Shown: positions 1,894 to 57,110 of the stretch, in pieces
Position numbering within the stretch: position 1 is the first letter of the stretch
Layout of the letters: every line of letters starts with the position of its first letter
Assembly (NCBI GenBank): GCA_965649765.1
Contig: OZ287757.1
Location: forward strand, 55,490,001 to 55,554,000
Origin: Bispira polyomma
Lineage: Eukaryota
Direction of reading: 5' to 3'
Length of the DNA: 64,000 bases
The notes under the pieces: generated by a model
Told to the model about the DNA's origin: nothing
Database searches by the model: none
Seen by the model: only the letters and a program-made list of their open reading frames with translations
Program-made: the position numbers and the translations under genes

Positions 1894-2149
1894 GGGGCCG
1901 CGGTGGCCTAGTGGTTAGCAAGCATTGCGCTTCACAATCACTGGTCTCTCACCTCTGGGTGGCGTGAGTTTGAATCCTGTCGATGCCTATGTGGGAAAGG
2001 TGGTAGTTCCTTACTGTAGGCCGCTGGTTTCATTGCAGAATCTTGACCGACTGTATGCAGTGTTTCCTCCAGCGTTTCCAACTACCCGTCCCAATATAAC
2101 CTACTAAAAGATACTGGAGTGGACGTTAAATATCCAAATTCAAATTCAA
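1894..2149 (+). mobile_element. tRNA-derived SINE, copy 1
   Basis: A box TGGCCTAGTGG, B box GAGTTTGAATCC, 3' (AAATTC)n tail; 15-bp TSD ATCCATGAAGACTGA at 1878 and 2150. Confidence 0.92.
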
Positions 2150-20525: not shown

Positions 20526-23500
20526 GGGGTTCCACATTCAGAATTTAGTTCGCGATGTTCCCGACTTTGAGGTCCACGTACGGGAAGGTCGGGGAGCAAA
20601 AACGGGGTGGTCGGGAAGGTTGGGAAGAATATCAAAAAAGTTAGATATTTTGAAAATGGTCTAGACTTTTGGTCCCGGACCTCAAAGTCGGGACCATCAA
20701 TACAGTCGATCCAATTGCCAATATGTTCTGTCCGATAGGTTGGGGCGCACTGCCGGCCTGTCCTATTGCCGGCCTGACCTCTCCTATTGGGACCCGCCCC
20801 TTTTTCAATATGACAGGCCGGGCTGCCAATCCGATTGAACTTATTTGACTCCTGACTTGACGTATTACTCCCCGATCATACTTTTTGTCACCCCGGCAGA
20901 ACTTGGTGTGATTACGTTTTTTTACACCGATCGAACTTAACACAGCAGGACAGAACGTATTGGCTATCAGATCTGCTGGGAGAGGTAAAAGATCGAACAG
21001 GGGGAGGATAGGACAGAACTTAGCAGTAGGATCTGACGTATTCAGTACCGACCAATAGGATCAAACTTATGGAGTACGGGGTGTTTGGGTATAAAAACTT
21101 CCCGTCAGTACTGGACTCGTTGTATTTGGAGATTGCTGACTGGCACTTGAAGTTGTGTTTTTTGTGCAGGGGTTTTTATTGTTTTTAATTATATGTACTG
21201 AGTTTAGGGACGATTTTACAGCTTAGGTTCTTTTTTATTATAACACAACATTAAAGATGCCTAGATTGAGGAGAGTCAAGAGGAAGATTGTGGAGGAGAG
21301 AGAGAAGGAGTTTGAAGTGGGATAAATAATTACAGACAATAATGGCAAGAAATTATTTTAGAAGGGTAGACAGTACAAAGTCTGTCCCAAATAACCCAAG
21401 AAGTACCAAATTGACATACAAATTCCCCAGGCTGTAATGCACTGTGTGTGTTTTTTTTTTGGAATAAAACCCACAAATAATTTTGAGGAAAAGGAATTGA
21501 GAATCTTTTTCTTAAACTTTAACTTTTTGTAGACAAAATAAATAACCCCTTGAGATAAAAAATCTTCCAAATCAGTGGTCACACAACTTTTTTTGATTTT
21601 AACCCTTTTTTGCCCAAAACAAGTGGCACCAAGGGTTTTCATTATGTCTGTGTTTAGGGCTTTTAACAGTTTCAATGGTTTGTGGGGGACTGGTTAAGTT
21701 GTATGTATGTAGGGTCCTGGGTATTACATTTAGTGATTGTTATTGGTAATGGGTTGGGGGTGGGGGTGTAACAAACAGCTCAAACATTGTTCTTGAAATA
21801 TTTGGATGGTCCTGAAAAAGACCTTTTAAATTTTCTGCTACTGCAAGACCTCTGGGTTGGCTTTTCATCTGGCTCAGGTGGTTAGGCTCAGGCTCAGGCT
21901 CAGGTTAAACTCTTTCCTCTTGCCACGGGACTGCCCCCTCATTCATAAAAAATCCATTAACACATCCCTCTGTTCTTTGGCCGCCCTGGATGGATTTCTG
22001 TGGGTGGTTGGTCGATCTCCTACCAACTGCACCTTGGGTTCAGGTGGATCATCTTGTGGGTTGGGGTGCTCTAGTGCTGGGTTTCCACACCGGCTTCTCA
22101 GTATGTTATATAATATCACACATATCCTGTAGTTACAGATTTTCTGTGCATGGGTGAGTTCCTTCCTTGAGTAGGGTTTCATCATCCACGTTTTCAGGGC
22201 ACAGCCATCGTCCCCCAGCAGGAAGTATTCCACGTCACTTCGAGACCCCTCAAACAGTAGTGCAGGTCTCGGCAGCCCATTGGAACCATCTTCAATCTTC
22301 TGCTTGAGCTCTGAGAGGTTAAAAGTTTGGGCGTCGAAACAGGAACCACTACAGCCAATGTCCACCCAAATAAATCTGTAGTCCGCATCAACCAGGGCAA
22401 ACTGGATAATGGAGTGGAAGCCTTTGTACTTGTAAAATTCGCTCCCAGCCTTGGGAGGCTTCTTGATGGCCACGTGCTTCCCATCAATAGATCCAACAGC
22501 ATGAGGGATATTCCACCTTTTCCTGTACACTTCTTCTATTTTCAGCCAGTCTGCGGGGGTGGTTGGGCAGGCTAGATATTCTGTCTCATATTCCCTAATG
22601 ATGGCCTTGCATACTTCTGGTATAAACTTGATGATAGATGATTTCCCCACCCTGAACTGGTAGGACAGGGACCTGTAGCTCTCCCCAGTGGCCAGGTGCC
22701 TCAAAGTTACAGCCAGTTTCAGTCCAACATCCAAGGGCTTCTGAACCAAGTTGTTTCTTTTTTCACATGGGGTGTTATCCTATCCTTGATTTCATTAAAT
22801 ATATCAGGTGGCAGCCTGAAAAAATTCCTGTATAAGGCTGCATCCCCTTCCTGTAGCTCCGGCACTAAGTTTGTGTAGTAGCCTAGGGCCTCTCCCTGAC
22901 TGATCCAAGGCTTGACCCAGCAGATTGGTGATATATGTGGAAGTCTAATCCTCTCCGGGGGAGCCTGAGGGGCACGTGGTGGTGTTGGGTTCAAATCCTG
23001 CTGAGCCTGAGCCTCGGCCTTGTCTTTCTCATGTTGTAATATAAGCATGAGGATACATATTTCAATCTCAAAAAAAACTAAAAATGTCCCTAGTCTCCTC
23101 AAAAAATCTTTATCACTTCTTCCTGGCATTTTACTCAATTACTCAATCATTAATGACCTGATTACTCAAAAAATCATAAGTTTTAGGGCTCAAAAAGAGG
23201 TAGTTATAGGGTCTGGAAGCACTCTCGCACTCCGACCAATACGTCAGACCCTATAGTCAACACGTTTGATCCTAAGCCAATACGTTCGATCCTATTGTCA
23301 ATAAGTTCGATCCTATCAAGGTCGGGAAGGTCGGGGGTCAATGGAGTTCAAAGTCGTACGGCCTTTACGTACGATCGGGGTCGTGGGCCAATCAAAACAG
23401 CGCGCAATCAGTTCGCTCGGGAAGGTCGGGGCACATTTTCATTTTCCCGCCCAAAAAGTGGATTTTATTGATTTTTTGGTCCTGACCTTCCCGACTTTAA

Positions 23501-28869: not shown

Positions 28870-31330
28870 GAGCTCATGTTTTTTCGTTCTGGTCTTTTTT
28901 GTGCTGTCCCTGTCTGGTGACATCCAAGTAAATCCTGGCCCCAAATGCCTTACAAAAAGCAAGGGCCCTTCCGCTGTTAAAAGTATACTCATTAATAAAC
29001 GTGATGTAACAGGTATCATTGAGACATGGATTGAAAAAAGTGACAGACTCTTTTCGTGCTAGCATTACCCCTTGCATACAATTTCTTTCAAAAGCCGTGC
29101 AGAGACAGCAGAGTCAGTGTTTTTGTGAAAATATTTTTAATGTGGTTGAAATCAATCTTCATAATTTTCCCTTATTCAATCTTCAAAAAAATGACACATT
29201 GTTCTTTTCCTTTTGCCTCTTGACAGTCTAAAGACTACCATGCCTCTCAAAATCATCCTTTCCCACTGACTGGACTGATCGCATGGAAATTATAAATACC
29301 AGATTTCTTGAGACGTTAATAACAGGTGATTTCAACATAAATATAGACAAAGCATACGACTCGTCCACAGACTTCACAGAACTACTTACAAGATTTTATT
29401 GCACCCAACATATCACTAAAGTAACACACATACATGGTCACATTTATACTTAGTCATAACAAAATCAGACTCCTCTATCTTTGGTGAATCATTCGTGGCA
29501 GAAGGTATTTCTGACCATTTTACTGTCAGCCTCTATATTAAAATTTAGAAAAATAGATGAAATCAACATTGACAAATTCAAATTTGACATTGCATCCTCC
29601 CAACTTCTCAGAAACCCAATGACAAATGCCACTGATCTGTGTGATAAATACAAAACTGTTCTGGGAGATATCATTGAAAATCATGCCCCTCTTTGGGAAA
29701 AAAACGTATTGTCTCATCCACACTACAGCTTGACCACCCCAGAAATCCTCACTGCCAATAAAAAAAAAGGTTCCTGGATAAAATATGGCACCATACTAAA
29801 TCTAGAGTTGATTGGTCACATTCACAGTGGCTGTTAACCATCACAACAGGCTCCTGTCAAAAGTTGAAAAAGATCGCTATGACTATCTAATCTAAAAAAA
29901 TTGCACAGACTCGAGGAAATTTTAGCAATCTGTTGAGAAGATACTTCACAAAGTTTCATATCCGGATTGTAACAAATTTACTGAAGCTGCAAATATGTTT
30001 GGTAAGTTTTTCTTTGGGAAAGATTGATAAAATTTGTATAACTTTCAAACCATCCTTCTCTCTCAACAGCCCAACTCCACGACAAAATCATAACTTCATC
30101 CCCATCCAAAAATGTGACCTAGACCCTATTCTAACTTCCTTACTAAAAGATTTTATAGACATTCTACTAACTCTAATCACTAACATTATAAACTGCTCAC
30201 ATCAAGAGGGCTGCTTCCCAAAAACGTAAGCCTATAACTCCAAAAGACAAAATTAGACAGAAATAACCTTAAAAATTACAGACCACTATCGAATCTAAGC
30301 TTCGTCTTTAAATAGATTGAGAAAGCTGTTGCTCTCTAAATAAATGAACACTTGTACACCAACCACATGTTAAATGCACACCAGTCAGCCTATAGAAAAT
30401 TCCATTCAAATAAAACAGCACTACTGAAAAATGGCAATGACATCAATATGATATTACCCTTCTTAACCTTCTTGATTTGTCTGCTGCGTTTAACACGATT
30501 GACCACAAGATACTTTCTGAATGTCTCAATTCTTGGTTCAGGTTATCAGACTCAGTTCTTCAATTAATCAAATCCTATCTAGACTTCTCTTATCAAATCA
30601 TCAGGGTCGAAAAAAGCTAAGTCAAGGTTCTGTCCTCGGGCCTCTTCTGTTTTCACTGTACACTACTCCCCTTGGAAATATAATATCCTCACACCAAAAT
30701 ATCAGCTATCACATCTATGCAGATAACATACAGATCTACTGCTCACTCACTCCCAAAAATGGCTCCCAAGTCCTGGAAGAGCTTTCTAGCTGCCTGACTT
30801 TGATTGAATCCTTTCTGAGAAATTCAAAATTAAAGCTCAATCCTGACAAAACTGAGTTCCTACTTATTGGCCCCAAACATCAGACAGAAAAGGTCCTCGA
30901 CTTCTTTCCCACTAGTCTCCTTGCTAACAGCACTGTTCCTGCTGACAGCACGAAGAACCTTGGAGTCGCTTTAATTCTGACTTCTCCTTCAAAAACCATG
31001 TCTCAAATATCTGTCGTTTCTGCTACTGCAACATCAGTGACTTTTGTAGGATCTGTTGGCATCTAACTCTAGAACGTGCCATCGCAGTGACATGCCCTGA
31101 TATCAAGTCAAGTAGATTACTGCAACTCACTACTATATAAAATTGAACAGAGCCAAATAGACAAGCTACCTAAAGTTAAAAAAACCTATGCAGAATTGCA
31201 CTAGCTAATTACACTAGCTGCCTTTTGAGTTCCGTATAAAATTTAAGGAAATTGTACTCATTTTTAATACAGTCTATGTACAACAACCTGCCTACATATC
31301 ATCCATGCTGTCTCTCAGCAATCTCACAAG
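28870..31330 (+). mobile_element. Decayed CR1/L2-like LINE ORF2 (endonuclease + RT)
   Basis: [62 protein letters not shown] across many frameshifts. Confidence 0.85.
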
Positions 31331-38808: not shown

Positions 38809-39419
38809 CTATTCAGGTTTTGGGGATGCTCTTTCAATCCATTCATTGATGGTGAGACTGTTACCACTGCTTTTAGCCATTACATTTTCTAACTTATCTG
38901 ACTTATCAAACTTAAAAATAGATTTCTCAAGTAACCATTCTAGTAAATCACTAAACTGATTCATCCTCCACCATTCTACATCCAGAGGCAGATAGCCCTC
39001 ATTGCACAACATGAATGCTGTCCACTTCCATTTTGTAATCTGGAAAAAATCGACATCAACAAGATCAGGAATCCCATTACTTGTGTAAGGCTTTACATAT
39101 ACAGTCTCAATATTAAAATCATGTTTGGTCCTGAAGGCATTGATCTTCTCAGCACATGTTTTACATGGTCCATAATTCTGGAGAACCACAGCCTTTTCTA
39201 TATCATTCTTTTTCTTTAAATATGCCATAACTCTTACTTCCACATGTTGTCTCTCTTTTCTCTCTTTATTGCTGTCTTTTTCATTTTCAAACACTCCTGA
39301 TCTAACTGGTGGTCTGCCATCTCTGTAGAAAATCAAACACTGCGCAATCGTCTCTTTTGGCCATATACAGTCAATAGGTAAAGTGGTCATGAATATTTCT
39401 ACAGCCTCTTTAGACATAC
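38809..39419 (-). CDS. AID/APOBEC-like cytidine deaminase, catalytic (last) exon
   Basis: 202-aa open frame with Zn-deaminase motifs QHVE (HxE) and NYGPCKTCA (PCxxC). Other AID/APOBEC-like segments: ETIAQCLIFY, GVFEN, VYVKPY. Acceptor ttttgtAG at 39421-39420, phase 1. Confidence 0.85.
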
Positions 39420-40418
39420 CTACAAAATATCAAAAATCAAGATGACAACTTAAATTAAGTTAAACATAAATTTAGTTTGATAGCATAATGTTTTGCTTTG
39501 AATGCTTTGTTGACGGATATATTTTGTTCTATTTTGATTTGTATGTATACAGATTCTGCAAACCTTTCTTGGATGGTCACCGTGGACCAATATTAAAGAT
39601 ACTCTTTGCTTCACTTGTACTGTCAAGTTCATTAAAATATTGCAGATTGTTGCAAATCCCTACCTATACTAATGATATGCGGGGGAAACCATTTCAATTC
39701 GGAATGTAATGTGAGCATTTAAAATGTGTGGGTTGCTTCTATATATGTTTCAATCTGAGAATCGCGTAATGACTGAAACTGCATAGAGCATGATCAGATA
39801 TTATTAAATATACTTTTTATATAAATTTAAATATTTTTTAATACTTCATCTTCTTGACTCTTAGTAGATGTGCACTATTGCGCAGAATGAAGGAAGTGCC
39901 CAGGGTTTACTAAATATTTATTTCTTGGTAAAGAAATATATTAGTCTATGATTTGATAAATAACACTTCAACCCAAAATTGGATTTTGGCACCAGTTTTA
40001 TAAATTGAATAATACCCTTTAATAATAATATAAAAACAACCATATTTCAAGTAGGAGTTTATATCAATTTATACATATATAAAGGGGATGTGAACATGGT
40101 ATATCAATAACACCCTATCTATTTATAGCAAAGGTAATATTAACTATTGGAGATGAATAGTTTAAATTAACACAGTTTACTAATGATACCACTAAAATTA
40201 TGAATGTTTCTGATAGTTGTACTTGTAGCAGCTTTGAATGTAATTTCCTATTTGGTACATTATCTGGATTAAGAAATGCATATAAAGGAAAGACTAAAAT
40301 AATTTGAATTAGATTGATAAACAAGAGAGTTTTCGCTATTAGGAATAAGTTACAGTGTATGTGCAAACGTAATTCCTAAACTAAATTATATACCACCTAT
40401 ATGAAAAATCACTGTTAC

Positions 40419-40493
40419 CCTTAGGTGTCTGTGCTGATGCCTCTGCTCCTTCTTCCTCCTGTTGTGTGCTATCTTTTTCCTCAGATGACTCCC
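40419..40493 (-). CDS. Internal exon of deaminase gene (acidic linker GESSEEKDSTQQEEEGAEASAQTPKG)
   Basis: catcAG acceptor, GTAAC donor, phase 1/1, open and in frame with the catalytic exon. Confidence 0.7.
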
Positions 40494-40960
40494 CTGATGT
40501 TTCATCATATTAGTGAAAATATATACACATATTACTATTAAAAGCTTTATATAGCGTCCCATTGATATATTATCATCTTGTTTGCCAAAGAGATAACCTT
40601 ACAACACAGCTTTGGCAGTTATCAGTTTAGCAATTGGTGTGTTCACTTCTTCTCCAAGGTTTTTATCTTACCAGTAAACCTAGCAATATCAGTAGGAGTC
40701 GAATCAGGGACCTGCCAATCACCAGACTAACTCCCCCAAGAAAGACGCAAAGCGACAACATTCTAATCACCTTTTCAAGCCCCTTACCACTAAGCCATAA
40801 GATACCACATATTTCAATTGTCTCACACACTGTCAGCTCTGTGGACTTATTTGCACAATGTCTATCAATACAAATATTATTATTAAAGCAATGTGGATAT
40901 ATCAGCCTCCCAGAAAGACATAATACTATGTAAATAGTATGTACAAATAAACTATCTTAC

Positions 40961-41033
40961 CATCAAGATTCAACTGTCTCAAATCTGTTTCCAGATGTTC
41001 CAGGTCACTTCCTCCACCTGCAGCCATTGAATC
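40961..41033 (-). CDS. Exon of deaminase gene (DSMAAGGGSDLEHLETDLRQLNLD); ATG at 41027 is an alternative start
   Basis: ttttatAG acceptor, G|GTAAG donor in phase 1, matching the next exon. Confidence 0.7.
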
Positions 41034-41159
41034 CTATAAAATAACATGCAGTAAATAATTAAATAACAGTATTTGTCATATGACAAACGATTTGCTAAAA
41101 GTGAAGTGAACACCAGACTAAACCTACTTATCCTATGAACTACCACTTTTGATACACAC

Positions 41160-41690
41160 TATTTGCATCGGTTAAACCATTTAGAGTTTGTTCTATTGCA
41201 TTTTGAAATATTTCTGCTGTCGATGATATCCCAAAACTCAGACTATTGTATTTTTCAGTCCCATATCAGTTGAAAATGTTTTAATGTAACAAAAAGGCTA
41301 TTCTAGTTCACAGGGATGATAACCCTTGTTTAAGTCCAATTTTGAGATAACTGTAGCTCTATTAAGATCTCTCAGGAGTTTCTCCAGAGTTGTGGTAATG
41401 TGCCGGGTACATCGAACTGCTAAATTAGCACATCTTATGTCAACACATTTTTTATTCAATCCGAATTCTCTGGCTGAGGGGTCACTACAATGGCTGAACC
41501 CCATGGGAAAAGTTCAATAATGTCTAAATACTGCAGCCTCTGTATTTCAGTTTCGACTTTCATCCTTATTTGGAAAGGAATCTGTCTGTGTGGCTGGGCA
41601 ACTGGCACAACTCTCTTGTAAATGTGAAGTTTTACCTTCATCACCTTTAGTTTTCCAATGCCTTGAAACAACTTGGGATACATAGAACAT
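41160..41690 (-). mobile_element. Gypsy LTR-retrotransposon pol (RT N-terminal) fragment in a deaminase intron
   Basis: YPKLFQGIGKLK, PVAQPHRQIPF, CVDIRCAN, SKLDLNKGYH, then RLSFGISSTAEIFQ. Confidence 0.8.
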
Positions 41691-41990
41691 ATATTATAGT
41701 AAGTTGTAATAGTAAAATTATAGTAAAATATGGTACCATAGTTTTCATTGTTTAAAAATCTTCATCGTGGGGTTCCTAGTATTATGTCTTATATGATTTT
41801 CCATATGTATCCTATCAGCGGCTTCAGTGGTATAATGGTAAAACATTCGCCTCATACCTTTGCAGGGCAAGGTACAAATCTTGGCCCATGCAAATATGTC
41901 GATTTTCCTGCCTTTTGTCGGAGTTCTCAAACAACCAATACTAGAACACCCACCAACTTCTTCTCATGTTTCAAGTGTTCTTTTTACACG

Positions 41991-42195
41991 GGCGGTCATA
42001 ATAGTGTCTGGGTCATAATAGTGTCCGTTGCATTTATAAAAAACTTACTGACGGAAATTAATATTGAAAACACATGCTACTTTATGCTTCTGAATTAAAT
42101 TACAGAATACTATTTATTATTTTTGAGAAATCCACGTTTTATACTTTAAAATGTCCGTTGAACAATATTGTGACCCGGACACTATTATGACCGCC
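41991..42195. mobile_element. Small MITE
   Basis: 25-bp inverted repeats GGCGGTCATAATAGTGTCTGGGTCA / TGACCCGGACACTATTATGACCGCC (one mismatch). Confidence 0.75.
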
Positions 42196-43962
42196 TACAT
42201 AGTTTTAGATGATATTCAGTGTGTTGATGGGTACAAGTAGCCACGTACATCTTCTGGGTAGCACCATAAGTGTTGTGACAACATATATATGATGTTATTT
42301 GTGTGGTTTGTGCTATAAGTGTCAAATCTGATCCAGCACCAGGGTCCTGGCTGGTGTTTTTGCTCACTCACTGTCGGGCAGTTAGTCATCTAGGCTGGTG
42401 TAGGGATAGCTTTAACAGACGTTTGTTTGCTGGGGCTTGGACTCCAGTAGTTGCTGCTGATAGCTTTTTGGTGTTATGTATCGGGATCATCGGTTCTCCT
42501 CTATGTTATCTCTCGGGTGTTAGTATATATCATGATACAGTCCAACTTCCATGGATCCTGGCAGTAATCACAGATCATATACTATATTATTTTATTTCGA
42601 AATTGTTAATAACGATCAAATAAACATTTTCCTCGCTCAGCATAAATGTTCAGTTAAGGGGTCGTACTGCACGGCCATGTAAGGTACACACCTGAGCTAG
42701 TATGAGGAACACTGTACATACACCTTATGACGAAAATATGGCCGCTTTTAAGAAAATATGTCTAAAGCCAGAATACACTTAGTGATAAGCATTACTGCAT
42801 TTTTTCACATGAGAATAATATGTGTAAGCTTAGAAAAACATGAACTTTTAAATATTTACAAACTATACTTATATTTTAGTCTTACATTGTGATTTACCTT
42901 TGTTTATGGTGGGCTGACAGATTATATTCTTATAAATATCATAAATATGATCATCTATGATTCACTTCATTATCAGTAAAATCTATATTCTATAAATGTT
43001 TAATATGATAATACATTAGTAAATTTGACAGTAAACAAAGTTACTAATGAAGTTACTCCTAGTACATAATGTACTCAATCATTTCACTTTCTACTTAACT
43101 TCAAATTTATCAAACTTAAAAAAATTCCCAACTTATGCTAAGGTGACCTTACACCTTATGCTAAGGCAACGTACACCATATTTTAAGGTCATCTGATGCC
43201 CTTACCTCAAACTGTAAATAAAACCAGTAGTCCTTAAGCAAGATTCTAAAATGATAGGCTGCGCAATGTTTTAAATACACGTAAAACACTCAATGCACAG
43301 TAAAGTAGGTTGTTTTCGTTCTTCCATGAATCACTCTTCCTTATTGAAATTTAAATATTTTAGCCATTTCTTAATAGATTTTAATGCAATTAAATAACCT
43401 TTTTCATGACATTTGAAATTTTTGCCTCAAGTAAATTCCGAGGTTTTCAATAATTAATAGGCCTTTTTTTATAACTTCATATGCATTTGTTTTGCAAACT
43501 CAGTTGTCATATATGGTTACATATATGTTGTCATATATGAACGGAACAGCCCAAACATGGAACCATCTATGTAGTAGTGACAGGTATCATAGGCTTATTT
43601 CAATAAAAATTAATAGTTTATCATTTTAGAATAGGAACAAAATACTTTTAATACACCCACCCTATCAATCGTTTAAAATCCGCATAAAACACTTTTGTAT
43701 TTTTTATTCCTATATTAAAAAACTATTTACTGCAATGTTGTTCTACCGCTTCAACTTATTAACCGTTATTATGTATATTCCATGGTTTATATGTACTTAC
43801 ATTTAGCCTGGTCTCCTGAGGAACTGACCGTTACACTCACTGAGTTGGTGACATAATAAGACCAAGGTTTTGATAAAATGATAACTTACATGCTGTTTCA
43901 TTTAATTGTCTTAAGTCTGTGTATTTTATCTTTATTACAGTTTGGAATAATAGTGTATTTAC

Positions 43963-44049
43963 CTTGGGTGTCCTCTTTTTTTGTTGCTGTCCACTGTTGG
44001 GTGTCTGTGCTGCAGCTGCTGGCACTTTTTCAACCTTAGTCGTTGACAT
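43963..44049 (-). CDS. Probable upstream exon of deaminase gene (MSTTKVEKVPAAAAQTPNSGQQQKKRTPK)
   Basis: attcAG acceptor, AAG|GTAAAT donor, phase 0/0, in frame with the 41033 exon. Shares AQTP and TPK with the 40.4-kb exon. Confidence 0.5.
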
Positions 44050-44979
44050 CTGAATGGTGTTTGACATATACAGTACATTAATTATATAACATTGTATTTA
44101 CTATATTTACTAATAATGGTATTGCTTATTCAGCTAAAGGGCAGGTAGACAAGTCTAGTAGCATCAAAGTATAAAGTCAGCACTTACTTTTTGAAGACTT
44201 TAAAATATCTTAATGAAATATTTATTTTTATTCTAGAATAGTACACACTATTTGCCTGTGGGAGGGAATTTATAGTACCAAGATTATCATTTTTTTGAAA
44301 ATCTTCATCCTGAGGTTCCTAGAATTATGTTTCATATGATTTTCCACATGTATCCTATCAGCTACTTCAGTGGTATAACTGTAAAACACTCGCCTCCTAC
44401 ATCTGCAGGATTACGTTCAAATCTTGGCCCATCCATGTATGTGGCAAACTTGATAGTACACATATTGAAGGACATTTCTCACCCATCAATTGCCAGTCGT
44501 CATATGACAAAAGATTTGCTAAAAGTGACTTTAAAAACAGACCAAACCCACTTATGAACACAACTTGTATCTTCCCCTCTTTCCAAACGCATTGCAACAC
44601 TGCATGCAAGGTCTTACTGACGTCCCCAATCATTTACACCCTTATACCCACTCAGCTGGTGACACTTTCCCATAATGAGACCAGGGTTTGATGAAACAAT
44701 AACATATTGTGTAGCTAATAGCTACGACACAATGTTATGGACTAATATATTTGACATTACTTCCAAGAGTATTAAAGGTATTGTGAATGTCTGAGTGACA
44801 CAGACACACACTTCTTTAACCCCAGAATCAATGTTATTTTTGGGGAGCAAGTAAGAAAGGTGGACCTTGAACCTCCATCTGATGAAAGAGTATTTGAGTT
44901 AATATACTGTTTCATTTTGTTCTCTTAAATCTTTGTTTTTTATCTTTATTCGAGTTTTGCGGACAAATATCATATGTAC

Positions 44980-45117
44980 CTTGAGAGTCTCCTTTTGTCG
45001 TCGATGTCCGCTATCAGGTGTATATGCTGCATGAGCAGCCATATCTTCTCGTGGTTTTTCTTTTCTTTGTACTTTGTCTCTTTTTTTCCTGGTTGATTTT
45101 TCGTTTTCCATCCTCAT
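44980..45117 (-). CDS. Probable first coding exon of deaminase gene (MRMENEKSTRKKRDK...AAYTPDSGHRRQKETLK)
   Basis: AAG|GTACAT donor in phase 0; acceptor tttcAG at 45132-45131; paralogous to the 44.0-kb exon. Confidence 0.45.
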
Positions 45118-46399
45118 GTAGTCTCACACACTGAAATAAATTAAAGGGACCAATACAACTAAGTGCTTCTTTTATAGAAAGTCATGAAAGGCTAGCCAAA
45201 ATAAAATATGCCTCGATGATTCTAAATGATTGTCCTTTTCCATTGGACCTGCCCTTATAATGAAAAGCACATTGATTGTTATGATTTTAGCGGTGTTCGT
45301 TTTAAATATTTCACTACAAACTGTCTTTTAAAAATTCATTTAATCAGAATATTTTTAATAAAATTAAGTTTTTCAAAAAAATATTTTTTTTTTATAATCC
45401 TTGTTAAGTAATTTATTATTTTGTGCGGTCTTTTTGCTTTGTTCTTGTCTGATATTTATTGTATGTATTAGCCTTATTGCCAAATGTTATTGTAAGTAAT
45501 TTATTTATCTTTTGTTTTGTTTGTCTGACTATTTATTGTAAAGTGATATACATTCTAGTCACGATAAAATACAAGCGTGTTGAAAGCGTCGTCAACATCC
45601 AACTAATCTGATCTAGTGGACCTATATGGACACACTGTGTCGTGGGACCATTATTTTTCCACCTAGAAATGTACTAGAAGTTTAGATGCTAAATGTCTTG
45701 GTAATGGATAGTGTATTCAAACTTATTAGTTAGTAATGTACACTAAATACATGAAAATGCTGAAAAATATATAGTGAACCTTTTTATTTTATGATCCAAC
45801 TTATCAAATAACTATTGAACCAATATCAATGTAGAGATACATGTATTATACTTTACAGTCCCACAAAGATCTTTTCGTTAAATATTATTCATAGTAAGCC
45901 CTTTTTGTTTGCAATATACCCAGCTAAGTGGATATCACACTAAAGTTTCTCTAAATATTTCCTTACAGTACTGTGTTTCCACATCAATTTTTCCAGTTTT
46001 AGTTCTAATCTTACCCCCAAAAGGACTTTGTTCCACATTTTTAAATTTGTTCTATGTATACAGCACAAACAAAAATCAAGACTGACATTATTGTTAAACC
46101 ATCACCCTATGGGCGAGATTAAAATTTTATCGGTGAAACTAAAATGTTCTTATGTTCCTCTTTTTTAAAACAGAGCATTTGAAGCTTCAGATTGAGGCAT
46201 TATATTTTTATATATACAGTATGGATGACAACCAAAAATAGGAACTATTTTTCTTTCTTTATAAAGCATTTTAATGCCTCAGGCCCAAATTTATTAGTTG
46301 GGGGGTGGGGGGGCATCATGCTTTTGATTTGTCTGTCCGTCCAGCTGTAACACTTGGATAGAGGACAAACTCACATGTTCTTCTTCAAGTTAGGAATAT

Positions 46400-49508: not shown

Positions 49509-51824
49509 GTGTATAATAGTCTTAAATGTAATACTGGCAGTACACATTGGAGGGCAGATTGGGCCAAATTTGTAAATAGATCTTATGCTGATGTGGTTAA
49601 AAGAAAGGCTCTCTCCAGGTCTGCTGCCATAAAGGTTTCTGTACAAAGTGCGAATGTGAATCAGAGGTGGCAAAGTCACCAGGTTAAATGTTCACCATGT
49701 TTAAATAACAACCAAATTTCAGAAGTGTCCACAAAACATGAACTGGGGCACAGAGTGAGTGTTAAAACTTTCACAAAAGGTGCTTCCCCTTTTACAAGTG
49801 CACAAAGGAATAATGTAATGTCAAAAATGGGTAAACCCCCTCCAACAAAAGGTGATCAAGTTGGCCAAAAGCTGGAAATCACAAAATTAGACATTCAGGG
49901 CAAATGGCCCATTTCCACTCACAATAGGTTTTCCCCGTTGAGTGACAATGACCATTATATGGACACTAGTGACAACTCTTTCACACATTTAGCAGATACT
50001 TGTAACCAAGGTCAAGGTCTTAAAATACTCTCTCGAGGTACTGGGGGAATAAAATCAGACAAATATGACCTAGAACTACAAACTAAATCGAAAAACAGGG
50101 AACTTATAAAACGTGCTTCCAACCAGCCTCAGTTCCAGCAATGGGATGCTCAAACTACAGATAAGTATGGGTTTATTCCGCTAAATGACCTCCAAGTTCC
50201 CCAAACGGATAAACGAGTAAAGTCGGATAAGTCTTTGTTAGAGTTACACACTCAGATTAAGAAGGACAACTACCCAAATTATATGGGGGCACAAGTTCAA
50301 TTGAAATCTGAGTTGAACCCAGATGTATGGGAAAAATACTTGACTGACTACTGGGATAACCAACTCCCCTTTTTGATAAGATATGGGTTTCCCCTCGATT
50401 TTAATCCTGACAGCAAGTTATCTCATACAGAACAGAATCATTCATCTGCAACACAATTTCCAGATGATGTGCATGCTTATTTAAAAGAAGAGACTGAGTT
50501 AGGCGCCATGTTGGGTCCTTTCCATAAGGCCCCCATACAAAACCTCCATATTTCTCCCTTTATGACTAGGGAAAAGCCAGGTGCCGCACACAGGCGCGTT
50601 ATCATAGATTTAAGCTTTCCTCATGGCAACTCTGTGAATTCGGCTGTAGTCAAGGATAAGTATCTCGGTACTGCGTTTGCATTAACCCTTCCCACAATTG
50701 ACACAATTACAAACAAAATATGTCGTATGGGACGTGGAACGCTCTTATATAAAATTGACGTAAGTCGGGCATTTCGTCACGTCAAAATGGATCCAGCTGA
50801 TTACAATCTATTAGGCTTAAAATTAGACAAATACTACGTCGACTCTTGCCTCCCATTTGGTTTTCGGCACGGGAGCGCAATTTTTCAGCGATTAAGTGAC
50901 GCCGTCAGGTACATCATGAAACGTCACGGACATGACGTCACCAACTATATCGACGACGTAATCGGCTATGGTGACGTCATAGAAAGTAAACATTCATTTG
51001 ATATATTGCTCAACTTACTCCAGGAACTAGGCTTTGCGATTAGTCACAAAAAACTTGTTCACCCCAGCACGTCAGTAACATGTCTGGGGGTGTTAGTTAA
51101 TACAAATGACTTGACAATCTCATTGCCAGATGAAAAGCTACTAGAAATAAACACACTTGTGCAAGACTGGCAATTAAGAAACTGCTGCAGTAAGAGGGAG
51201 TTGCAGTCACTGCTAGGTAAATTGTTATATGTATCCAAGTGTGTTCGAGTTTCACGTGCTTTCTTAAACCGAATGCTTGACGTCCTAAGATCTGTAGGCC
51301 CGGATCAAAAAGTAAAACTCACACCTGAGTTTCATCAGGATGTAAATTGGTTTAAAAAATTTTTACCAACGTTTAATGGAAAAGCCTTCTTTGAACACAA
51401 ACCCACTACCGATTGTATTCAGTTGGATGTGTGCCTGCAAGGTCTGGGAGGCCGTTGTAATGATGAAGTATACCAATTCCAAATTCCTCTAGGTTATCTA
51501 GATTTCACGATAGTTCATCTGGAAATGTTAAACATCCTAGTTGCCATTAGGCTATGGAAGTCAGTGTGGGCAGGTAAGAGGCTAATATTGCAATGCGACA
51601 ATGCTGCCGTGGTCACTATCCTAAATTCAGGCAAAACTAAAGACCTCACTTTGGCAGCTATTGCCAGAATCATCTTCATGGCCGTAGCCTCCCATGATAT
51701 CAGTCTCAAAACCATTCACATTTTAGGTAGACTTAATACAGTGGCTGATCTCCTCTCTAGATGGCAGATCACGGCCAGCAATAATGACAAGTTACTACAA
51801 CTGGTATCGAATCCCAATGGGTAA
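49509..51824 (+). CDS. Reverse transcriptase-RNase H polyprotein of DIRS/Ngaro-like element
   Basis: RT motifs KIDVSRAF, LPFGFRHGS, YIDD. RNase H acidic residues in QLDVC, HLEM, QCDN, NTVADLLSR. Confidence 0.93.
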   Translation: MYNSLKCNTGSTHWRADWAKFVNRSYADVVKRKALSRSAAIKVSVQSANVNQRWQSHQVKCSPCLNNNQISEVSTKHELGHRVSVKTFTKGASPFTSAQRNNVMSKMGKPPPTKGDQVGQKLEITKLDIQGKWPISTHNRFSPLSDNDHYMDTSDNSFTHLADTCNQGQGLKILSRGTGGIKSDKYDLELQTKSKNRELIKRASNQPQFQQWDAQTTDKYGFIPLNDLQVPQTDKRVKSDKSLLELHTQIKKDNYPNYMGAQVQLKSELNPDVWEKYLTDYWDNQLPFLIRYGFPLDFNPDSKLSHTEQNHSSATQFPDDVHAYLKEETELGAMLGPFHKAPIQNLHISPFMTREKPGAAHRRVIIDLSFPHGNSVNSAVVKDKYLGTAFALTLPTIDTITNKICRMGRGTLLYKIDVSRAFRHVKMDPADYNLLGLKLDKYYVDSCLPFGFRHGSAIFQRLSDAVRYIMKRHGHDVTNYIDDVIGYGDVIESKHSFDILLNLLQELGFAISHKKLVHPSTSVTCLGVLVNTNDLTISLPDEKLLEINTLVQDWQLRNCCSKRELQSLLGKLLYVSKCVRVSRAFLNRMLDVLRSVGPDQKVKLTPEFHQDVNWFKKFLPTFNGKAFFEHKPTTDCIQLDVCLQGLGGRCNDEVYQFQIPLGYLDFTIVHLEMLNILVAIRLWKSVWAGKRLILQCDNAAVVTILNSGKTKDLTLAAIARIIFMAVASHDISLKTIHILGRLNTVADLLSRWQITASNNDKLLQLVSNPNG

Positions 51825-52863
51825 AAGTAGAAGACACAATGTTAGAAATAGATTGGTCTATCTAATTGCAGATGTACCTTCCAAGCTAAGAAAGATTGCT
51901 ACACAAGCCTCATACAGAGCCCATCAGGCCTTTAGACCAGCCACTGAAAGGGCCTATACAAATATGTTTAGGATATTCTTGGCCTATTGTAGTTTCGCTC
52001 AGGTCAGGCCTCAAAATATCTCCCCCCTTATTATATTGGCTTTCTTAAAAGTATTAGTGGTTAATCATGTCTCTTCCTCCTCCATTGCAAACTACCTTTC
52101 GGCGGTTAAAGCTAAATTGGCCCTCTATGGCCTTGACGTCTCTGCATTTGCAGATCCTAGAATTAAGTATTACCAAAAAGCCCTTACACTCAATAGCCCC
52201 TTCAGGGCTAAAATTAACGCTATTATTGACATTCCCCTGTTACTCCAAATTACTCAAATTTGTGACAGCATGTACATGGGGCAGATCTTCAAGGCTCTGT
52301 ACCTCATTGCTTTCTTTTCTTTTCTTAGAATATCCAACTTACTTCCACATGCTGTCTCTCAATTCTCTCCACTAGTCCAACTGGCCCGGGGGGACGTACT
52401 TTTTGCCTCCCCTGGCCTCCACCTCATAATAAAGTGGTCTAAAACAATGCAGTCAAAGAATGTAGCAAAAGTTATTAAAATACCGAGCCTAAGTGGCTCT
52501 AGTCTCTGTCCGGTGGCTGCCACAAGGGCCTTGCTGGCTATTACTCCTGGACACAAAAATTCTCCTCTCTTTCAGTTTAAAAAATACCAGAAATGGTCTC
52601 CAATGATTGACACCCAAGCTAGGCAAAATCTCACACAAATTTTGAGGCGTCTTGGCCTCCAGCAATCAAACATTTCTTTCCACACCTTCAGGCGTTCAGG
52701 TGCCACCTGGCCCTTCAACAATAATGTCCCAATTCAAGATATCCAGAGCCATGGCACTTGGACGTCTGATTGTGTGTGGAAATATATTGTACAGGATCAC
52801 AATGCATCTGACCAAGTCGCCCTCACCTTCAAGGCCCTCCTTTCCCCTTCTACTACTTCCTAG
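51784..52863 (+). CDS. Tyrosine recombinase of DIRS/Ngaro-like element
   Basis: Catalytic set R (FLRISN), K (WSKT), HxxR (HTFRRSGAT), W and Y (HGTWTSDCVWKY). Confidence 0.93.
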   Translation: MTSYYNWYRIPMGKSRRHNVRNRLVYLIADVPSKLRKIATQASYRAHQAFRPATERAYTNMFRIFLAYCSFAQVRPQNISPLIILAFLKVLVVNHVSSSSIANYLSAVKAKLALYGLDVSAFADPRIKYYQKALTLNSPFRAKINAIIDIPLLLQITQICDSMYMGQIFKALYLIAFFSFLRISNLLPHAVSQFSPLVQLARGDVLFASPGLHLIIKWSKTMQSKNVAKVIKIPSLSGSSLCPVAATRALLAITPGHKNSPLFQFKKYQKWSPMIDTQARQNLTQILRRLGLQQSNISFHTFRRSGATWPFNNNVPIQDIQSHGTWTSDCVWKYIVQDHNASDQVALTFKALLSPSTTS

Positions 52864-55599: not shown

Positions 55600-57110
55600 G
55601 TGTACATTTTTAACACGCCTTATTGATGCTGAGGCACAACATCAGAATGAATAAACCGGTGGGAAAATCAAAATAATAGCCAGGTCGTCAGGAAGGATTC
55701 AGGAGCGTCCAGAGAGCGGACTATGGAGGATAGGCGAGCCTGAAGAGATAGATTTTAAGCTTTCTACTAAAACCAAAAACTGTATAAGGCAATTTTAGTT
55801 CCTGGTCTGAAAGTTGAATATCATTGCCCAGTAGTGTGATTAGGAATAGTGATATTAAGTATTCACTGTGTTTCTTGTTTCCAATTAGGATGAATTCAGT
55901 TTTATTTGGGTTTAATTTCAATTTGGAGAAATTCATCCATGCCTGAACTAAGAGAGGCAATTATGTCAAGGTTGTTTTCAGCATTTTGACGGTTGAGAGA
56001 AAAATAGATTTGAGTGTCATCAGCATACATATGATGTTTGACATTGTGATTGTTGATGACTGTACTGAGAGGATGTGCATAGAGAGTAAAAAGTAGAGGG
56101 CTAAGAACCAACCCCTGGGGTACTCCGAAAGGTAGGTTGATATAGGATAAAAAAGTGGTCACCCAATTTGATTTTTGGAGAACTAAGAGCTAGGTAAGAT
56201 TTTATCCAATCATAGACAGTGTCATTTAGACCAAATCACTGTTATAGGGTGTCAAAAAGTAAGCCATGATCGCGGGTATCAAAAGCTGCAGAGAGGTCAA
56301 GAAGGGTAAGGGCTACAGTTTCATCACGATCAAAGGCAAGGTTAATGTCATCACTGATTGAAAGGAGGCCACTCTCCGTGGAGTAATACTTTCTGAAGGC
56401 AGATTGGTGCGAGTAAACTAGGTTTTGTTTGTTTAGGTGGTCACAGATTTCTTTAGCCACAGCCTTCTCAATATGTTTAGACACAAAGCTGAGGTTGGAG
56501 ACTGGTCTATAATTTTTTAGCCCATTTTTGTTGAGGCCTGTTTTTTTCAGCAAGAGGGTGACATATGCGGAAGCATGAGGGGAATATACCATCTCTGAGT
56601 AAAAAATTGATGATGTTAGTGATAGGAGTAATGAAAAATGTCCCAAATATATCCGCAAGAAATGTGAGACAATGATTATCAGGTACAACTTGTTCATATT
56701 TGTGAAGTATTTTATTTATGGAGGTCCATAACCTTTTTGGTGAATGTGAGTTCTCATTTATGATGGAATCATAGTGCTCTTTTTTGGCTTTGGTCATTAG
56801 CATGTTAAAGTGGTTTGTGGCGATTCTATAGCGCTTCCTGTCAAATGTTGATTTTGTGCGCCCACATAGCTGCTTAAGTTGATCTTTATGCCATTTGGCT
56901 TCATTAATGTCTGAGTTGTGCTTTCATGAGGATCATAAAGTGGCATGACTATTTAGAATAGAGGACAAAGTATGGTTATATTGCAGACTGAGACTATTTG
57001 CATTTTGACATGGGTGTTTAATGAGATGAGAAGCCTGGATGTCATCCCAAAATTTGTAAATGTTAATTTTCCTGATGTTGCGGAATTACCTTAGGTTTAT
57101 GTGACAATGG
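55600..57110 (-). mobile_element. CR1/L2-like LINE fragment with 3' end
   Basis: [53 protein letters not shown]; the tail resembles 60480-60680. Confidence 0.85.

What the first reader, a model, noticed from the sequence alone, without database searches (positions are those of the whole stretch)
38809..45117. Invertebrate AID/APOBEC-like cytidine deaminase gene hidden among transposons
Seen: the 202-aa ORF has HVE and NYGPCKTCA, spaced as in Zn-dependent deaminases, plus segments matching the AID/APOBEC pattern (T...C.I.Y strand, G.FEN, HxE, N-Y-x-P-C-x-x-C, ...Y after strand 4). Five GT-AG exons (44980-45117, 43963-44049, 40961-41033, 40419-40493, 38809-39419) join in frame without stops to ~327 aa. 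Established: AID/APOBEC-like deaminases are polynucleotide C-to-U editors in immunity; invertebrate members are known but patchy and fast-evolving. Inference: this is an intact, probably uncharacterised, non-secreted member, with G instead of the usual S before PC. It may act as an antiviral or anti-retroelement mutator, or as an RNA editor.
Basis: partly seen in the sequence, partly recalled or inferred. Interest (0 to 1): 0.9.

Follow-up and report, generated by a model that had tools for sequence, protein, structure and literature searches.

The report
Annelid AID/APOBEC-like cytidine deaminase gene
An intact gene for an AID/APOBEC-type nucleic-acid cytidine deaminase sits between transposons in what is probably a fan-worm (annelid) genome; it adds a divergent member to an enzyme group already known in invertebrates, but the long multi-exon N-terminus proposed for it has no support.

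Summary
The 202-codon ORF at 38809-39417 (-) is real. It carries H58-x-E60 and P84-C85-x-x-C88. All sequence and fold evidence places it among AID/APOBEC-like deaminases (AADs): Pfam sub-threshold hits led by SNAD4 and NAD1; a family profile that hits APOBEC3G/H, AID and Lingula AID-like deaminase 1; and an AlphaFold model whose best PDB matches are APOBEC3H, APOBEC3G, AID and APOBEC1 (Z 11-14).

It belongs to a small family of five ORF-bearing loci plus one pseudogene in this 1.04 Gb genome. Mitochondrial ND5 indicates a Sabellida-like annelid. About seven close relatives lie in unnamed ENA assemblies.

The four upstream exons are mechanically correct (GT-AG, in frame), but about 1.2e8 alternative chains fit the same rules. 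Exons 1 and 2 are neutral-looking tandem duplicates, and no relative has anything like them upstream. However, a phase-1 splice acceptor directly before the ORF is shared with three close homologues that lack their own ATG, so some upstream coding exon remains possible. No RNA data were available.

Verdict: a genuine, divergent new member of a known kind. Enzymatic activity and a defence role are inferred.

The parts
38809..39417 (-). Main (possibly only) coding exon: 202 codons plus TAG stop. It encodes the whole AID/APOBEC-like deaminase domain and a conserved C-terminal tail.
   Evidence: ORF list. Pfam SNAD4 2.3e-5, NAD1 2.4e-4, APOBEC_N 6.4e-4. Homologous end to end with paralogues and ENA relatives. 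AlphaFold pLDDT 79.9, pTM 0.73. Best folds are APOBEC3H, APOBEC3G, AID and APOBEC1.
39238..39246 (-). Codons for H58-V59-E60: zinc ligand His and catalytic Glu at the end of helix 2.
   Evidence: Sequence. Aligned with HAE of the paralogues, Lingula AIDL1 and APOBEC3H.
39154..39168 (-). Codons for P84-C85-K-T-C88: the two zinc-ligand cysteines (loop 5 and start of helix 3).
   Evidence: Sequence. P84 is invariant in 13 family sequences. Aligned to the SPCxxC of APOBEC3G/H.
39283..39285 (-). Codon for N45, the loop-3 Asn that contacts the target cytosine in AADs. It is followed by a family-atypical 8-residue K/E-rich insertion before H58.
   Evidence: Alignments. The role of this residue is taken from PMC5889660.
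39085..39087 (-). Codon for Y111, the loop-7 aromatic residue characteristic of AADs and absent in TadA.
   Evidence: Nearly invariant in the family. Aligned to the loop-7 Tyr region of APOBEC3H. The criterion comes from PMC5889660.
39001..39030 (-). Codons W130-K-W132-T-A-F-M-L-C-N139: the family signature on helix 5 (consensus W-[KR]-W-x-A-F-L-L-W-N). A WW motif follows further on.
   Evidence: W130 and W132 are nearly invariant. Helix 130-139 in the model. Aligned with the CW..F helix of APOBEC3H.
39418..39432 (-). Probable 3' splice site: T-rich tract, AG (39421-39420), then GT (39419-39418) before the ATG. The intron would be phase 1 if the upstream exon is coding.
   Evidence: Sequence. 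The same phase-1 Y-rich AG acceptor lies at the equivalent place in L013, L014 and L029, whose conserved N-terminal residues have no in-frame ATG. These are the window protein's nearest relatives.
40419..40493 (-). Unique in the genome, with a 40-nt stretch 73% like part of exon 2.
   Evidence: No counterpart upstream of any paralogue or homologue.
40961..41033 (-). It shares a 7-residue motif with the stretch just after the proposed donor of exon 2.
43963..44049 (-). It is one copy of a tandem duplicate of roughly 150 bp.
   Evidence: Similarity to the exon-1 copy runs across the proposed donor: 76% after it and 68% before it, with dN/dS about 0.7 on 23 codons. No Pfam match.
44980..45117 (-). 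It is the other copy of the tandem duplicate.
41985..42196 (.). Very high-copy short element with 34-nt terminal inverted repeats (MITE-like), inside the proposed intron 2.
   Evidence: Inverted repeat 41991-42024 / 42162-42195. Summed contig depth is 1e4-6e4 against about 20-70 for the flanks.

Best explanation
The ORF at 38809-39417 (-) is the main coding exon of an intact gene for a non-secreted, zinc-dependent AID/APOBEC-like (AAD) deaminase of about 200 aa. It would bind zinc through H58, C85 and C88 and use E60 as proton shuttle to convert cytosine to uracil in single-stranded DNA or RNA. The target base would be held by N45 (loop 3) and Y111 (loop 7), as in APOBEC3 and AID. It is one of two old subfamilies of a small, fast-evolving family in an annelid genome: five ORF-bearing loci, one with the catalytic residues lost and one truncated, plus a pseudogene. 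Its most likely role is mutational defence against viruses or the very active retroelements of this genome, as for APOBEC3 and the sea-urchin and Lingula AID-like enzymes. Shown here: the intact ORF, the catalytic and AAD-specific residues, the fold, the family relations and the conserved splice acceptor. Inferred: expression, substrate, activity and biological role. Translation probably starts at the ORF's own ATG or in a short upstream exon, not necessarily in the four exons proposed.
For: The ORF and motifs are present. Pfam ranks AAD families first for the window protein and for three of the four paralogues. L002 passes the SNAD4 cut-off, and relative P0002 passes the cut-offs of NAD1, SNAD4, APOBEC_N, APOBEC2 and NAD2. 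The family profile's best PDB sequence matches are all APOBEC3G/H/C/F (3e-6 downward), then AID and APOBEC1. hhalign gives 96.8% to Lingula AID-like deaminase 1 and 97% to an AID/Inv-AAD-annotated protein. The AlphaFold model has pLDDT 79.9. The Foldseek top 50 are all APOBEC. VIA Z is 13.8 for A3H, 13.6 for A3G, 11.7 for AID and 11.3 for APOBEC1. In a Foldseek-independent search AID, A3H and APOBEC1 come first at Z about 11 with 126-129 residues aligned. Paralogues and a pseudogene exist in the same genome, and relatives of 146-246 aa elsewhere. Catalytic and signature residues are conserved despite about 30% identity. Invertebrate AADs are published mutators that are induced by infection (PMC5956068; PMC5889660).
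Against: There is no transcript evidence at all: the only runs that hold the locus are DNA and the protein is not on record in any assembly. The window protein itself is below every Pfam cut-off. No Inv-AAD or NAD1 match was found in the genome. In the wide fold search the margin over a phage dCMP deaminase (Z 10.1) and TadA (Z 9.1) is small, although far fewer residues align for those. Helix 4 is very short in the model. The window protein has an unusual K/E-rich loop-3 insertion and lacks an internal C-terminal segment of about 25 aa present in most relatives. Some vertebrate and invertebrate AADs show no mutator activity (PMC5956068).
Confidence: 0.72

Rival explanations
1. One reading: five coding exons give a protein of about 327 aa whose first 125 residues form a charged, low-complexity extension (perhaps a nuclear-targeting or RNA-binding tail).
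For: All borders are AG...GT and the frame stays open. The four upstream pieces are unique in the genome, not dispersed repeats. The acceptor before the ORF is phase 1, as in the three nearest homologues, which need an upstream coding exon. Strict-rule chains are more frequent than in shuffles.
Against: About 1.2e8 other chains satisfy the same rules. Exons 1 and 2 are tandem duplicates whose similarity is higher after the proposed donor than before it, with dN/dS about 0.7. Nothing similar lies upstream of the paralogues or of the ENA homologues. There are no Pfam matches. The ORF has its own ATG two bases after the acceptor, where four other members (L002, L005, P0001, P0004) also start. Called family proteins are 146-257 aa.
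Confidence: 0.15
2. The locus is an unexpressed or decaying relic of a lineage-specific expansion that happens still to be open.
For: The family clearly decays: one pseudogene with 8 stops, one C-truncated copy and one copy without catalytic residues. The locus is embedded in transposons. There is no expression evidence.
Against: A 206-codon open frame in AT-rich DNA is very unlikely without selection (estimated chance about 1e-7). All catalytic, AAD-specific and family-signature residues are kept, and homology runs from the first to the last residues. It is the only member of its subfamily in this genome.
Confidence: 0.1
3. It is an AAD-fold protein without polynucleotide-editing activity (like APOBEC2, APOBEC4 or the inactive sea-urchin and Lingula paralogues), acting by nucleic-acid binding or on an unknown substrate.
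For: Several AADs with intact motifs are inactive in mutator assays (PMC5956068). Loop 3 carries an unusual charged insertion and helix 4 is short.
Against: The complete catalytic set plus the loop-3 Asn and loop-7 Tyr are retained.
Confidence: 0.15
4. It is a free-nucleotide (dCMP/CMP) or tRNA (Tad/ADAT) deaminase, or bacterial contamination carrying a toxin deaminase.
For: There is a weak dCMP_cyt_deam_1 match (E 0.004). Phage dCMP deaminase reaches Z 10.1 and TadA Z 9.1. A Nocardia polymorphic toxin appears among distant hits.
Against: AAD families outrank these in every search. The loop-7 aromatic and the extra C-terminal helices are present. The gene lies on a chromosome-scale contig with the composition and the repeats of the host.
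Confidence: 0.03

Closest known systems
Lingula anatina AID-like deaminase 1 (AWK77801.1) and sea-urchin SpAIDL1-4 (Liu et al. 2018, PMC5956068)
   Same: Invertebrate classical AADs with HxE...PCxxC. The profile match to LaAIDL1 is 96.8%. They occur as small lineage-specific gene families. LaAIDL1 and SpAIDL1/2 are mutators in E. coli, and SpAIDL2 rises after infection.
   Different: Only about 30% identity over 61 aligned columns. LaAIDL1 has two deaminase domains (427 aa) while this protein has one. This family has G, not S, before PC, and its own W-[KR]-W...FLLWN...WW signature. Activity is untested.
Mammalian APOBEC3H / APOBEC3G catalytic domain, AID, APOBEC1
   Same: Best structural matches (Z 11-14, 126-140 residues aligned) and best PDB sequence-profile matches. 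They share the zinc site, the loop-3 Asn, the loop-7 aromatic and the Trp-containing helix 5.
   Different: 13-20% identity. Helix 4 is short, loop 3 carries a charged insertion, and the C-terminal tail differs. There is no orthology; this is an independent expansion in an annelid.
Pfam SNAD4 (PF18750), NAD1 (PF18778), Inv-AAD (PF18785)
   Same: SNAD4 and NAD1 are the top-scoring Pfam models for the window protein and its kin. Inv-AAD is listed in precomputed annotation for relatives P0001, P0008 and P0016.
   Different: The window protein is below every cut-off. SNAD4 is sponge-specific and secreted, and NAD1 is a vertebrate clade (PMC5889660). Inv-AAD gave no hit with the Pfam copy used here.
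Molluscan APOBEC-like 'hypothetical protein' clusters of the ESM Atlas
   Same: Nearest clusters by language-model features (0.92, 200 of 256 features). Similar length (176-233 aa).
   Different: No alignment-level relation was tested. The close family found by HMMER contains no named mollusc protein.

Membership tests
AID/APOBEC-like deaminases (AADs; Krishnan et al. 2018) | [quoted passage not shown] | tested here: met
   H58-V-E60 and P84-C85-K-T-C88, with 24 residues between them.
AID/APOBEC-like deaminases (AADs; Krishnan et al. 2018) | Profile similarity to AAD clades stronger than to other deaminase families | tested here: met
   AAD families lead the Pfam ranking, though DddA-like (3e-4) ranks third for the window protein. 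The top 37 of 49 PDB profile hits are all APOBEC3G/H/C/F/B; AID and APOBEC1 follow among weaker hits, mixed with a few non-AAD deaminases. hhalign gives 96.8% to LaAIDL1, 97% to P0016 and 71.6% to A3H. The window protein alone stays below Pfam cut-offs.
AID/APOBEC-like deaminases (AADs; Krishnan et al. 2018) | AAD fold (helix-4 division, with helices after strand 5) as the best structural match | tested here: met
   The Foldseek top 50 are all APOBEC. Z is 13.8-11 for A3H, A3G, A3A, AID and APOBEC1. The wide search puts AID, A3H and APOBEC1 first, but the margin over dCMP deaminase and TadA is only 1-2 Z units. Strand-5 orientation was not inspected.
AID/APOBEC-like deaminases (AADs; Krishnan et al. 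2018) | Loop-3 Asn (or small residue) and loop-7 aromatic residue that frame the target cytosine | tested here: met
   N45 and Y111. Y111 is nearly invariant in 13 family members and aligns with the loop-7 Tyr region of A3H. The criterion is quoted from PMC5889660.
AID/APOBEC-like deaminases (AADs; Krishnan et al. 2018) | C-to-U deamination of polynucleotides | not testable with these tools
   Needs a mutator or oligonucleotide assay.
SNAD4 (PF18750) | Score above the gathering cut-off; signal peptide; sponge lineage | tested here: not met
   24.9 bits against a cut-off of 27. The N-terminus is not hydrophobic by eye (no predictor was run). The host is an annelid, whereas SNAD4 is sponge-only and secreted.
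Inv-AAD (PF18785) | Score above the gathering cut-off (26.5 bits) | tested here: not met
   Not listed for the window protein even at E up to 10, and there is no match anywhere in the genome. Precomputed annotation of relatives P0001, P0008 and P0016 does list it, so the result depends on the model version.
NAD1 (PF18778) | Score above the gathering cut-off (27 bits) | tested here: not met
   21.7 bits and no genome-wide match. Relative P0002 passes with 40.5 bits.
CMP/dCMP deaminase (PF00383) | Score above the gathering cut-off (25 bits) | tested here: not met
   17.3 bits, E 0.004.

The most novel reading that the evidence does not exclude
The window gene and its kin form an undescribed, annelid-centred clade of AID/APOBEC-like deaminases. 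The clade has two old subfamilies, its own helix-5 signature W-[KR]-W...FLLWN...WW, and no Pfam model that captures the window protein. It would act as a mutator against the very young, high-copy retroelements of this genome, making it an independent APOBEC3-like arms race in a lophotrochozoan worm and a possible source of compact new base-editing enzymes.
Probability: 0.3. Interest if true: 0.6.

Novelty: new member of a known kind. Interest (0 to 1): 0.45.

Why it matters
AID/APOBEC enzymes drive antibody diversification and antiviral hypermutation in vertebrates. Their invertebrate relatives are patchy, fast-evolving and mostly unannotated. This locus adds a divergent family from an annelid; neither key paper names that phylum in its main text. 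None of the close relatives found (P0001-P0008) carries a name in any source. If active, it would extend nucleic-acid mutator immunity to annelids. It would also offer a compact (about 200 aa) deaminase with atypical substrate loops for editing tools. The genome's very recent DIRS-like retroelement burst gives a natural substrate on which editing footprints could be sought.

Tried and rejected
- Word-indexed homologue search with the ORF gave nothing. The exhaustive profile search was needed.
- RNA evidence: the one run search returned three runs of one study. Laying them showed even depth across 'introns' and no splice joints, so they are genomic DNA. Exact-protein look-up in assemblies was blank.
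- Bacterial promoter/terminator scan: irrelevant for a eukaryote and ignored.
- Looking for the upstream exons near the paralogues and ENA homologues with tblastn, blastn and tblastx found nothing.
- Aligning the upstream regions of L014 and L029 to find their missing first exon: the whole region is duplicated (70-83% identity), so no exon stood out.
- Pfam on the two upstream ORFs and on two ORFs in 41301-41683 that look pol-like by eye gave no significant hit, so no retroelement claim is made for them.
- TRF found no tandem array at 43350-43750, although contigs there show variable-length joints.
- Taxon from COX1 failed: nine TGA codons leave pieces too short. A stop-free ND5 piece was used instead.
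- The joined five-exon product was translated once, only to check the frame.

Full report
**1. Observation**

The minus strand of 38809-39417 holds an ATG-to-TAG ORF of 202 codons. It carries these residues:
- H58-V-E60 and P84-C85-K-T-C88, with 24 residues between E60 and C85.
- The strand T23..C27.I29.Y31.
- G41-V-F-E-N45, and Y111 after strand 4.

The window has about 31-43% GC. An open frame of this length there is very unlikely by chance (about 1e-7 per start, my estimate). Only eight ORFs of at least 150 aa exist in the 64 kb. The other seven are six transposon or host-gene pieces and one unassigned ORF:
- reverse transcriptases;
- a tyrosine recombinase;
- a DDE transposase;
- a multicopper-oxidase exon;
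- one ORF with no Pfam match.

That translation was made once as a frame check.

**2. What the ORF encodes**

Pfam gives only sub-threshold matches, but they are led by AID/APOBEC-like families. SNAD4 scores 2.3e-5 and NAD1 2.4e-4, and APOBEC_N, APOBEC4, APOBEC2 and NAD2 also appear. DddA-like (3e-4) ranks third. The general CMP/dCMP deaminase model is weaker, at E 0.004.

The genome is 1.04 Gb in 75 contigs, and the window is C10:55.49 Mb. It holds four more ORF-bearing paralogues at 29-33% identity and one pseudogene with eight stops:
- L002 has 257 aa with HAE/PCQKC and passes the SNAD4 cut-off.
- L003 has HAE/PCKHC.
- L005 has HTE/PCATC but is C-terminally truncated. It lies 11 kb from L003.
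- L004 has an intact ORF but has lost both motifs.

An exhaustive profile search of 1.84 billion representatives found 36 proteins. Eight were at E of 1e-8 or better. All eight are unnamed, 146-246 aa long, and come from ENA assemblies; six lie on Mb-scale contigs of one assembly, ERZ22147071.

More distant hits are:
- Lingula anatina AID-like deaminase 1;
- mammalian APOBEC3F/H/C;
- turtle APOBEC1-like proteins;
- an Acanthaster protein.

Relative P0002 passes the curated cut-offs of NAD1, SNAD4, APOBEC_N, APOBEC2 and NAD2.

A 13-sequence family profile was then compared with known proteins:
- Its top 37 of 49 matches among PDB sequences are all APOBEC3G/H/C/F/B (3e-6 downward); AID and APOBEC1 follow among weaker hits, mixed with a few non-AAD deaminases.
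- hhalign gives 96.8% to LaAIDL1.
- hhalign gives 97% to an ENA protein annotated with AID/Inv-AAD domains.
- hhalign gives 71.6% to an APOBEC3H, over 113 columns that include Y111 and the Trp helix.

**3. Fold**

AlphaFold2 with the family alignment gives pLDDT 79.9 and pTM 0.73. The secondary-structure order is that of a cytidine-deaminase fold followed by further helices. Three fold searches agree:
- All of Foldseek's top 50 PDB hits are APOBEC3 or APOBEC1; the best is A3H at 2e-7.
- Re-alignment gives Z 13.8 for A3H, 13.6 for A3G, 12.1 for A3A, 11.7 for AID and 11.3 for APOBEC1.
- A search independent of Foldseek puts AID, A3H and APOBEC1 first, at Z about 11 with 126-129 residues aligned. 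A phage dCMP deaminase follows at Z 10.1 with 100 residues, and TadA at Z 9.1 with 95 residues.

The margin in Z is modest. The Atlas feature search points to molluscan APOBEC-like clusters, and the Atlas shape search to vertebrate APOBEC and SNAD3 clusters.

The AAD-specific loop-3 Asn and loop-7 aromatic residue (criterion from PMC5889660) correspond to N45 and Y111.

Family-specific traits are:
- G before PC (consensus QNYGPCxxCA);
- W-[KR]-W-x-A-F-L-L-W-N on helix 5, then a WW motif;
- a conserved C-terminal [TS]-[LI]-x-E-[WYF]-[IV] motif.

The window protein keeps all of these. It has an extra K/E-rich loop-3 insertion and lacks an internal segment of about 25 aa.

**4. Gene structure**

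In 39420-45500 (-), 1.2e8 chains of up to four GT-AG exons reach the same acceptor in frame. Even under strict splice-site rules 2507 do.

Several other results argue against the specific exons:
- Exons 1 and 2 are parts of a tandem duplicate. Similarity runs across the proposed donors and is higher after them (76%) than before them (68%). dN/dS is about 0.7 on 23 codons, and the first about 70 nt of exon 1 have no counterpart.
- The four pieces are unique in the genome.
- Nothing resembling them lies within about 9-10 kb upstream of the paralogues, or within 3-8 kb upstream of the ENA homologues.
- They have no Pfam match.
- Four other family members (L002, L005, P0001, P0004) have a Met at the same aligned position as the window's ATG.

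One result points the other way. Homologues P0002, P0003 and P0005 have the conserved N-terminal (D)-L-E-I-F segment in frame upstream of their called Met. There is no in-frame ATG after the last stop. A T-rich AG acceptor in phase 1 lies just before that segment. The window has the same arrangement, AG then GT then ATG, also in phase 1.

In a maximum-likelihood tree the window protein groups with exactly these homologues (support 83/95). The other paralogues of this genome group with P0001 and P0004.

So the acceptor at 39420/39419 is probably real, and an upstream exon, possibly coding, is plausible (about even odds). Its identity is unknown. I give the specific four-exon N-terminus about 15%.

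**5. Expression**

Expression could not be tested. The three public runs that hold the locus show uniform depth over exons and introns and no splice joints, so they are DNA. They show no sequence differences in 39150-45140 in two samples. The exact protein is not on record elsewhere.

**6. Host**

The 15.5-kb mitochondrial contig has genes on both strands. A stop-free 412-aa ND5 piece is closest to Sabella spallanzanii (58% identity). It then matches many other polychaetes at 45-52%. This supports an earlier, unchecked note of this scan that the genome is an annelid. It is probably a member or relative of Sabellida.

Neither of the two key papers names annelids in its main text. 'Lophotrochozoans' are covered there, and the supplementary phyletic tables were not available.

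**7. Comparison with what is known**

Classical AADs with lineage-specific expansions of 2-22 copies are described for lophotrochozoans and echinoderms. Tandem clusters, individual copy-number differences and inactive paralogues are also described (PMC5889660). Sea-urchin and Lingula members are mutators in E. coli, and SpAIDL2 is induced by Vibrio (PMC5956068).

This locus shows the same pattern: a small family, a tandem pair, a dead paralogue and a pseudogene. It is therefore a new, divergent member of a known kind.

What is new:
- the host phylum;
- the failure of every Pfam model to capture the window protein;
- the family signature.

**8. Mechanism**

The zinc-site residues, the catalytic Glu and the AAD-type cytosine pocket residues are shown, on an APOBEC-like fold. 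From these I infer hydrolytic C-to-U deamination of single-stranded DNA or RNA. The absence of a signal peptide is judged by eye only. The role in defence against viruses or retroelements is also inference, made by analogy.

The genome has at least 36 near-full-length copies, 96-99% identical, of the DIRS-like element that lies 10 kb away in this window.

**9. Verdict**

The ORF, its family assignment and its intactness are confirmed. The N-terminal exon model is unsupported, except for the acceptor. The function is inferred, and the novelty is moderate.

Noticed in passing
window 49509-52863 (+): DIRS-like retroelement: a 771-aa RT ORF overlapping a 359-aa tyrosine-recombinase ORF. The genome holds at least 36 near-full-length copies at 96-99% identity, and 2204 first-look candidates, so this is a very young and probably active family.
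   Followed up: partly
window 41985-42196: Short element with 34-nt terminal inverted repeats. Its summed contig depth is 1e4-6e4 against a baseline of about 20-70, which suggests an extremely abundant MITE-like repeat.
   Followed up: partly
window 43290-43700: Repeated stretch (depth 500-5000) where contigs of the three DNA runs show alternative joints skipping 38-196 bases. This suggests a length-variable or collapsed repeat. TRF reports no array there.
   Followed up: no
window 10033-10665 (+): A 210-aa ORF with a strong multicopper-oxidase domain match (1.9e-21), probably an exon of a laccase-like host gene.
   Followed up: no
window 21943-22749 (-); 30521-31066 (+); 56242-56697 (-): A PIF/Harbinger-type DDE transposase ORF and two further reverse-transcriptase fragments.
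   Followed up: no
L004 (G000:C2:90.32 Mb), ORF 1366-2112 (+): Paralogue with an intact 248-aa ORF and the family's helix-5 signature. Both catalytic motifs are replaced (NVQ for HxE, PTHTF for PCxxC), so it is a candidate pseudo-enzyme.
   Followed up: partly
L005 and L003 (G000:C3:103.144 and 103.155 Mb): Tandem pair of paralogues 11 kb apart. L005 is truncated after the W-x-W motif. A 316-aa tyrosine-recombinase-like ORF lies about 350 bp downstream on the other strand, so a transposon insertion may have cut the gene.
   Followed up: no
L013, L014, L029 (ENA ERZ22147071): Three homologues whose conserved N-terminal residues precede the first in-frame ATG, each behind a phase-1 AG acceptor. 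Their true first exons are missing from the ORF-based gene calls. The upstream regions of L014 and L029 are duplicated over several kb at 70-83% identity.
   Followed up: partly
G000:C75 (L026, L027): Mitochondrial contig of 15,503 bp with long ORFs on both strands under code 5. This seems unusual for annelids (from memory, not checked here). ND5 is nearest to Sabella spallanzanii at 58% identity.
   Followed up: partly
Precomputed Pfam labels list PF18785 Inv-AAD for relatives P0001, P0008 and P0016, and use other names for PF18782, PF08210 and PF18771. The Pfam copy used for live scans gives no Inv-AAD hit for P0001 or P0008, so the two appear to be different Pfam versions.
   Followed up: no
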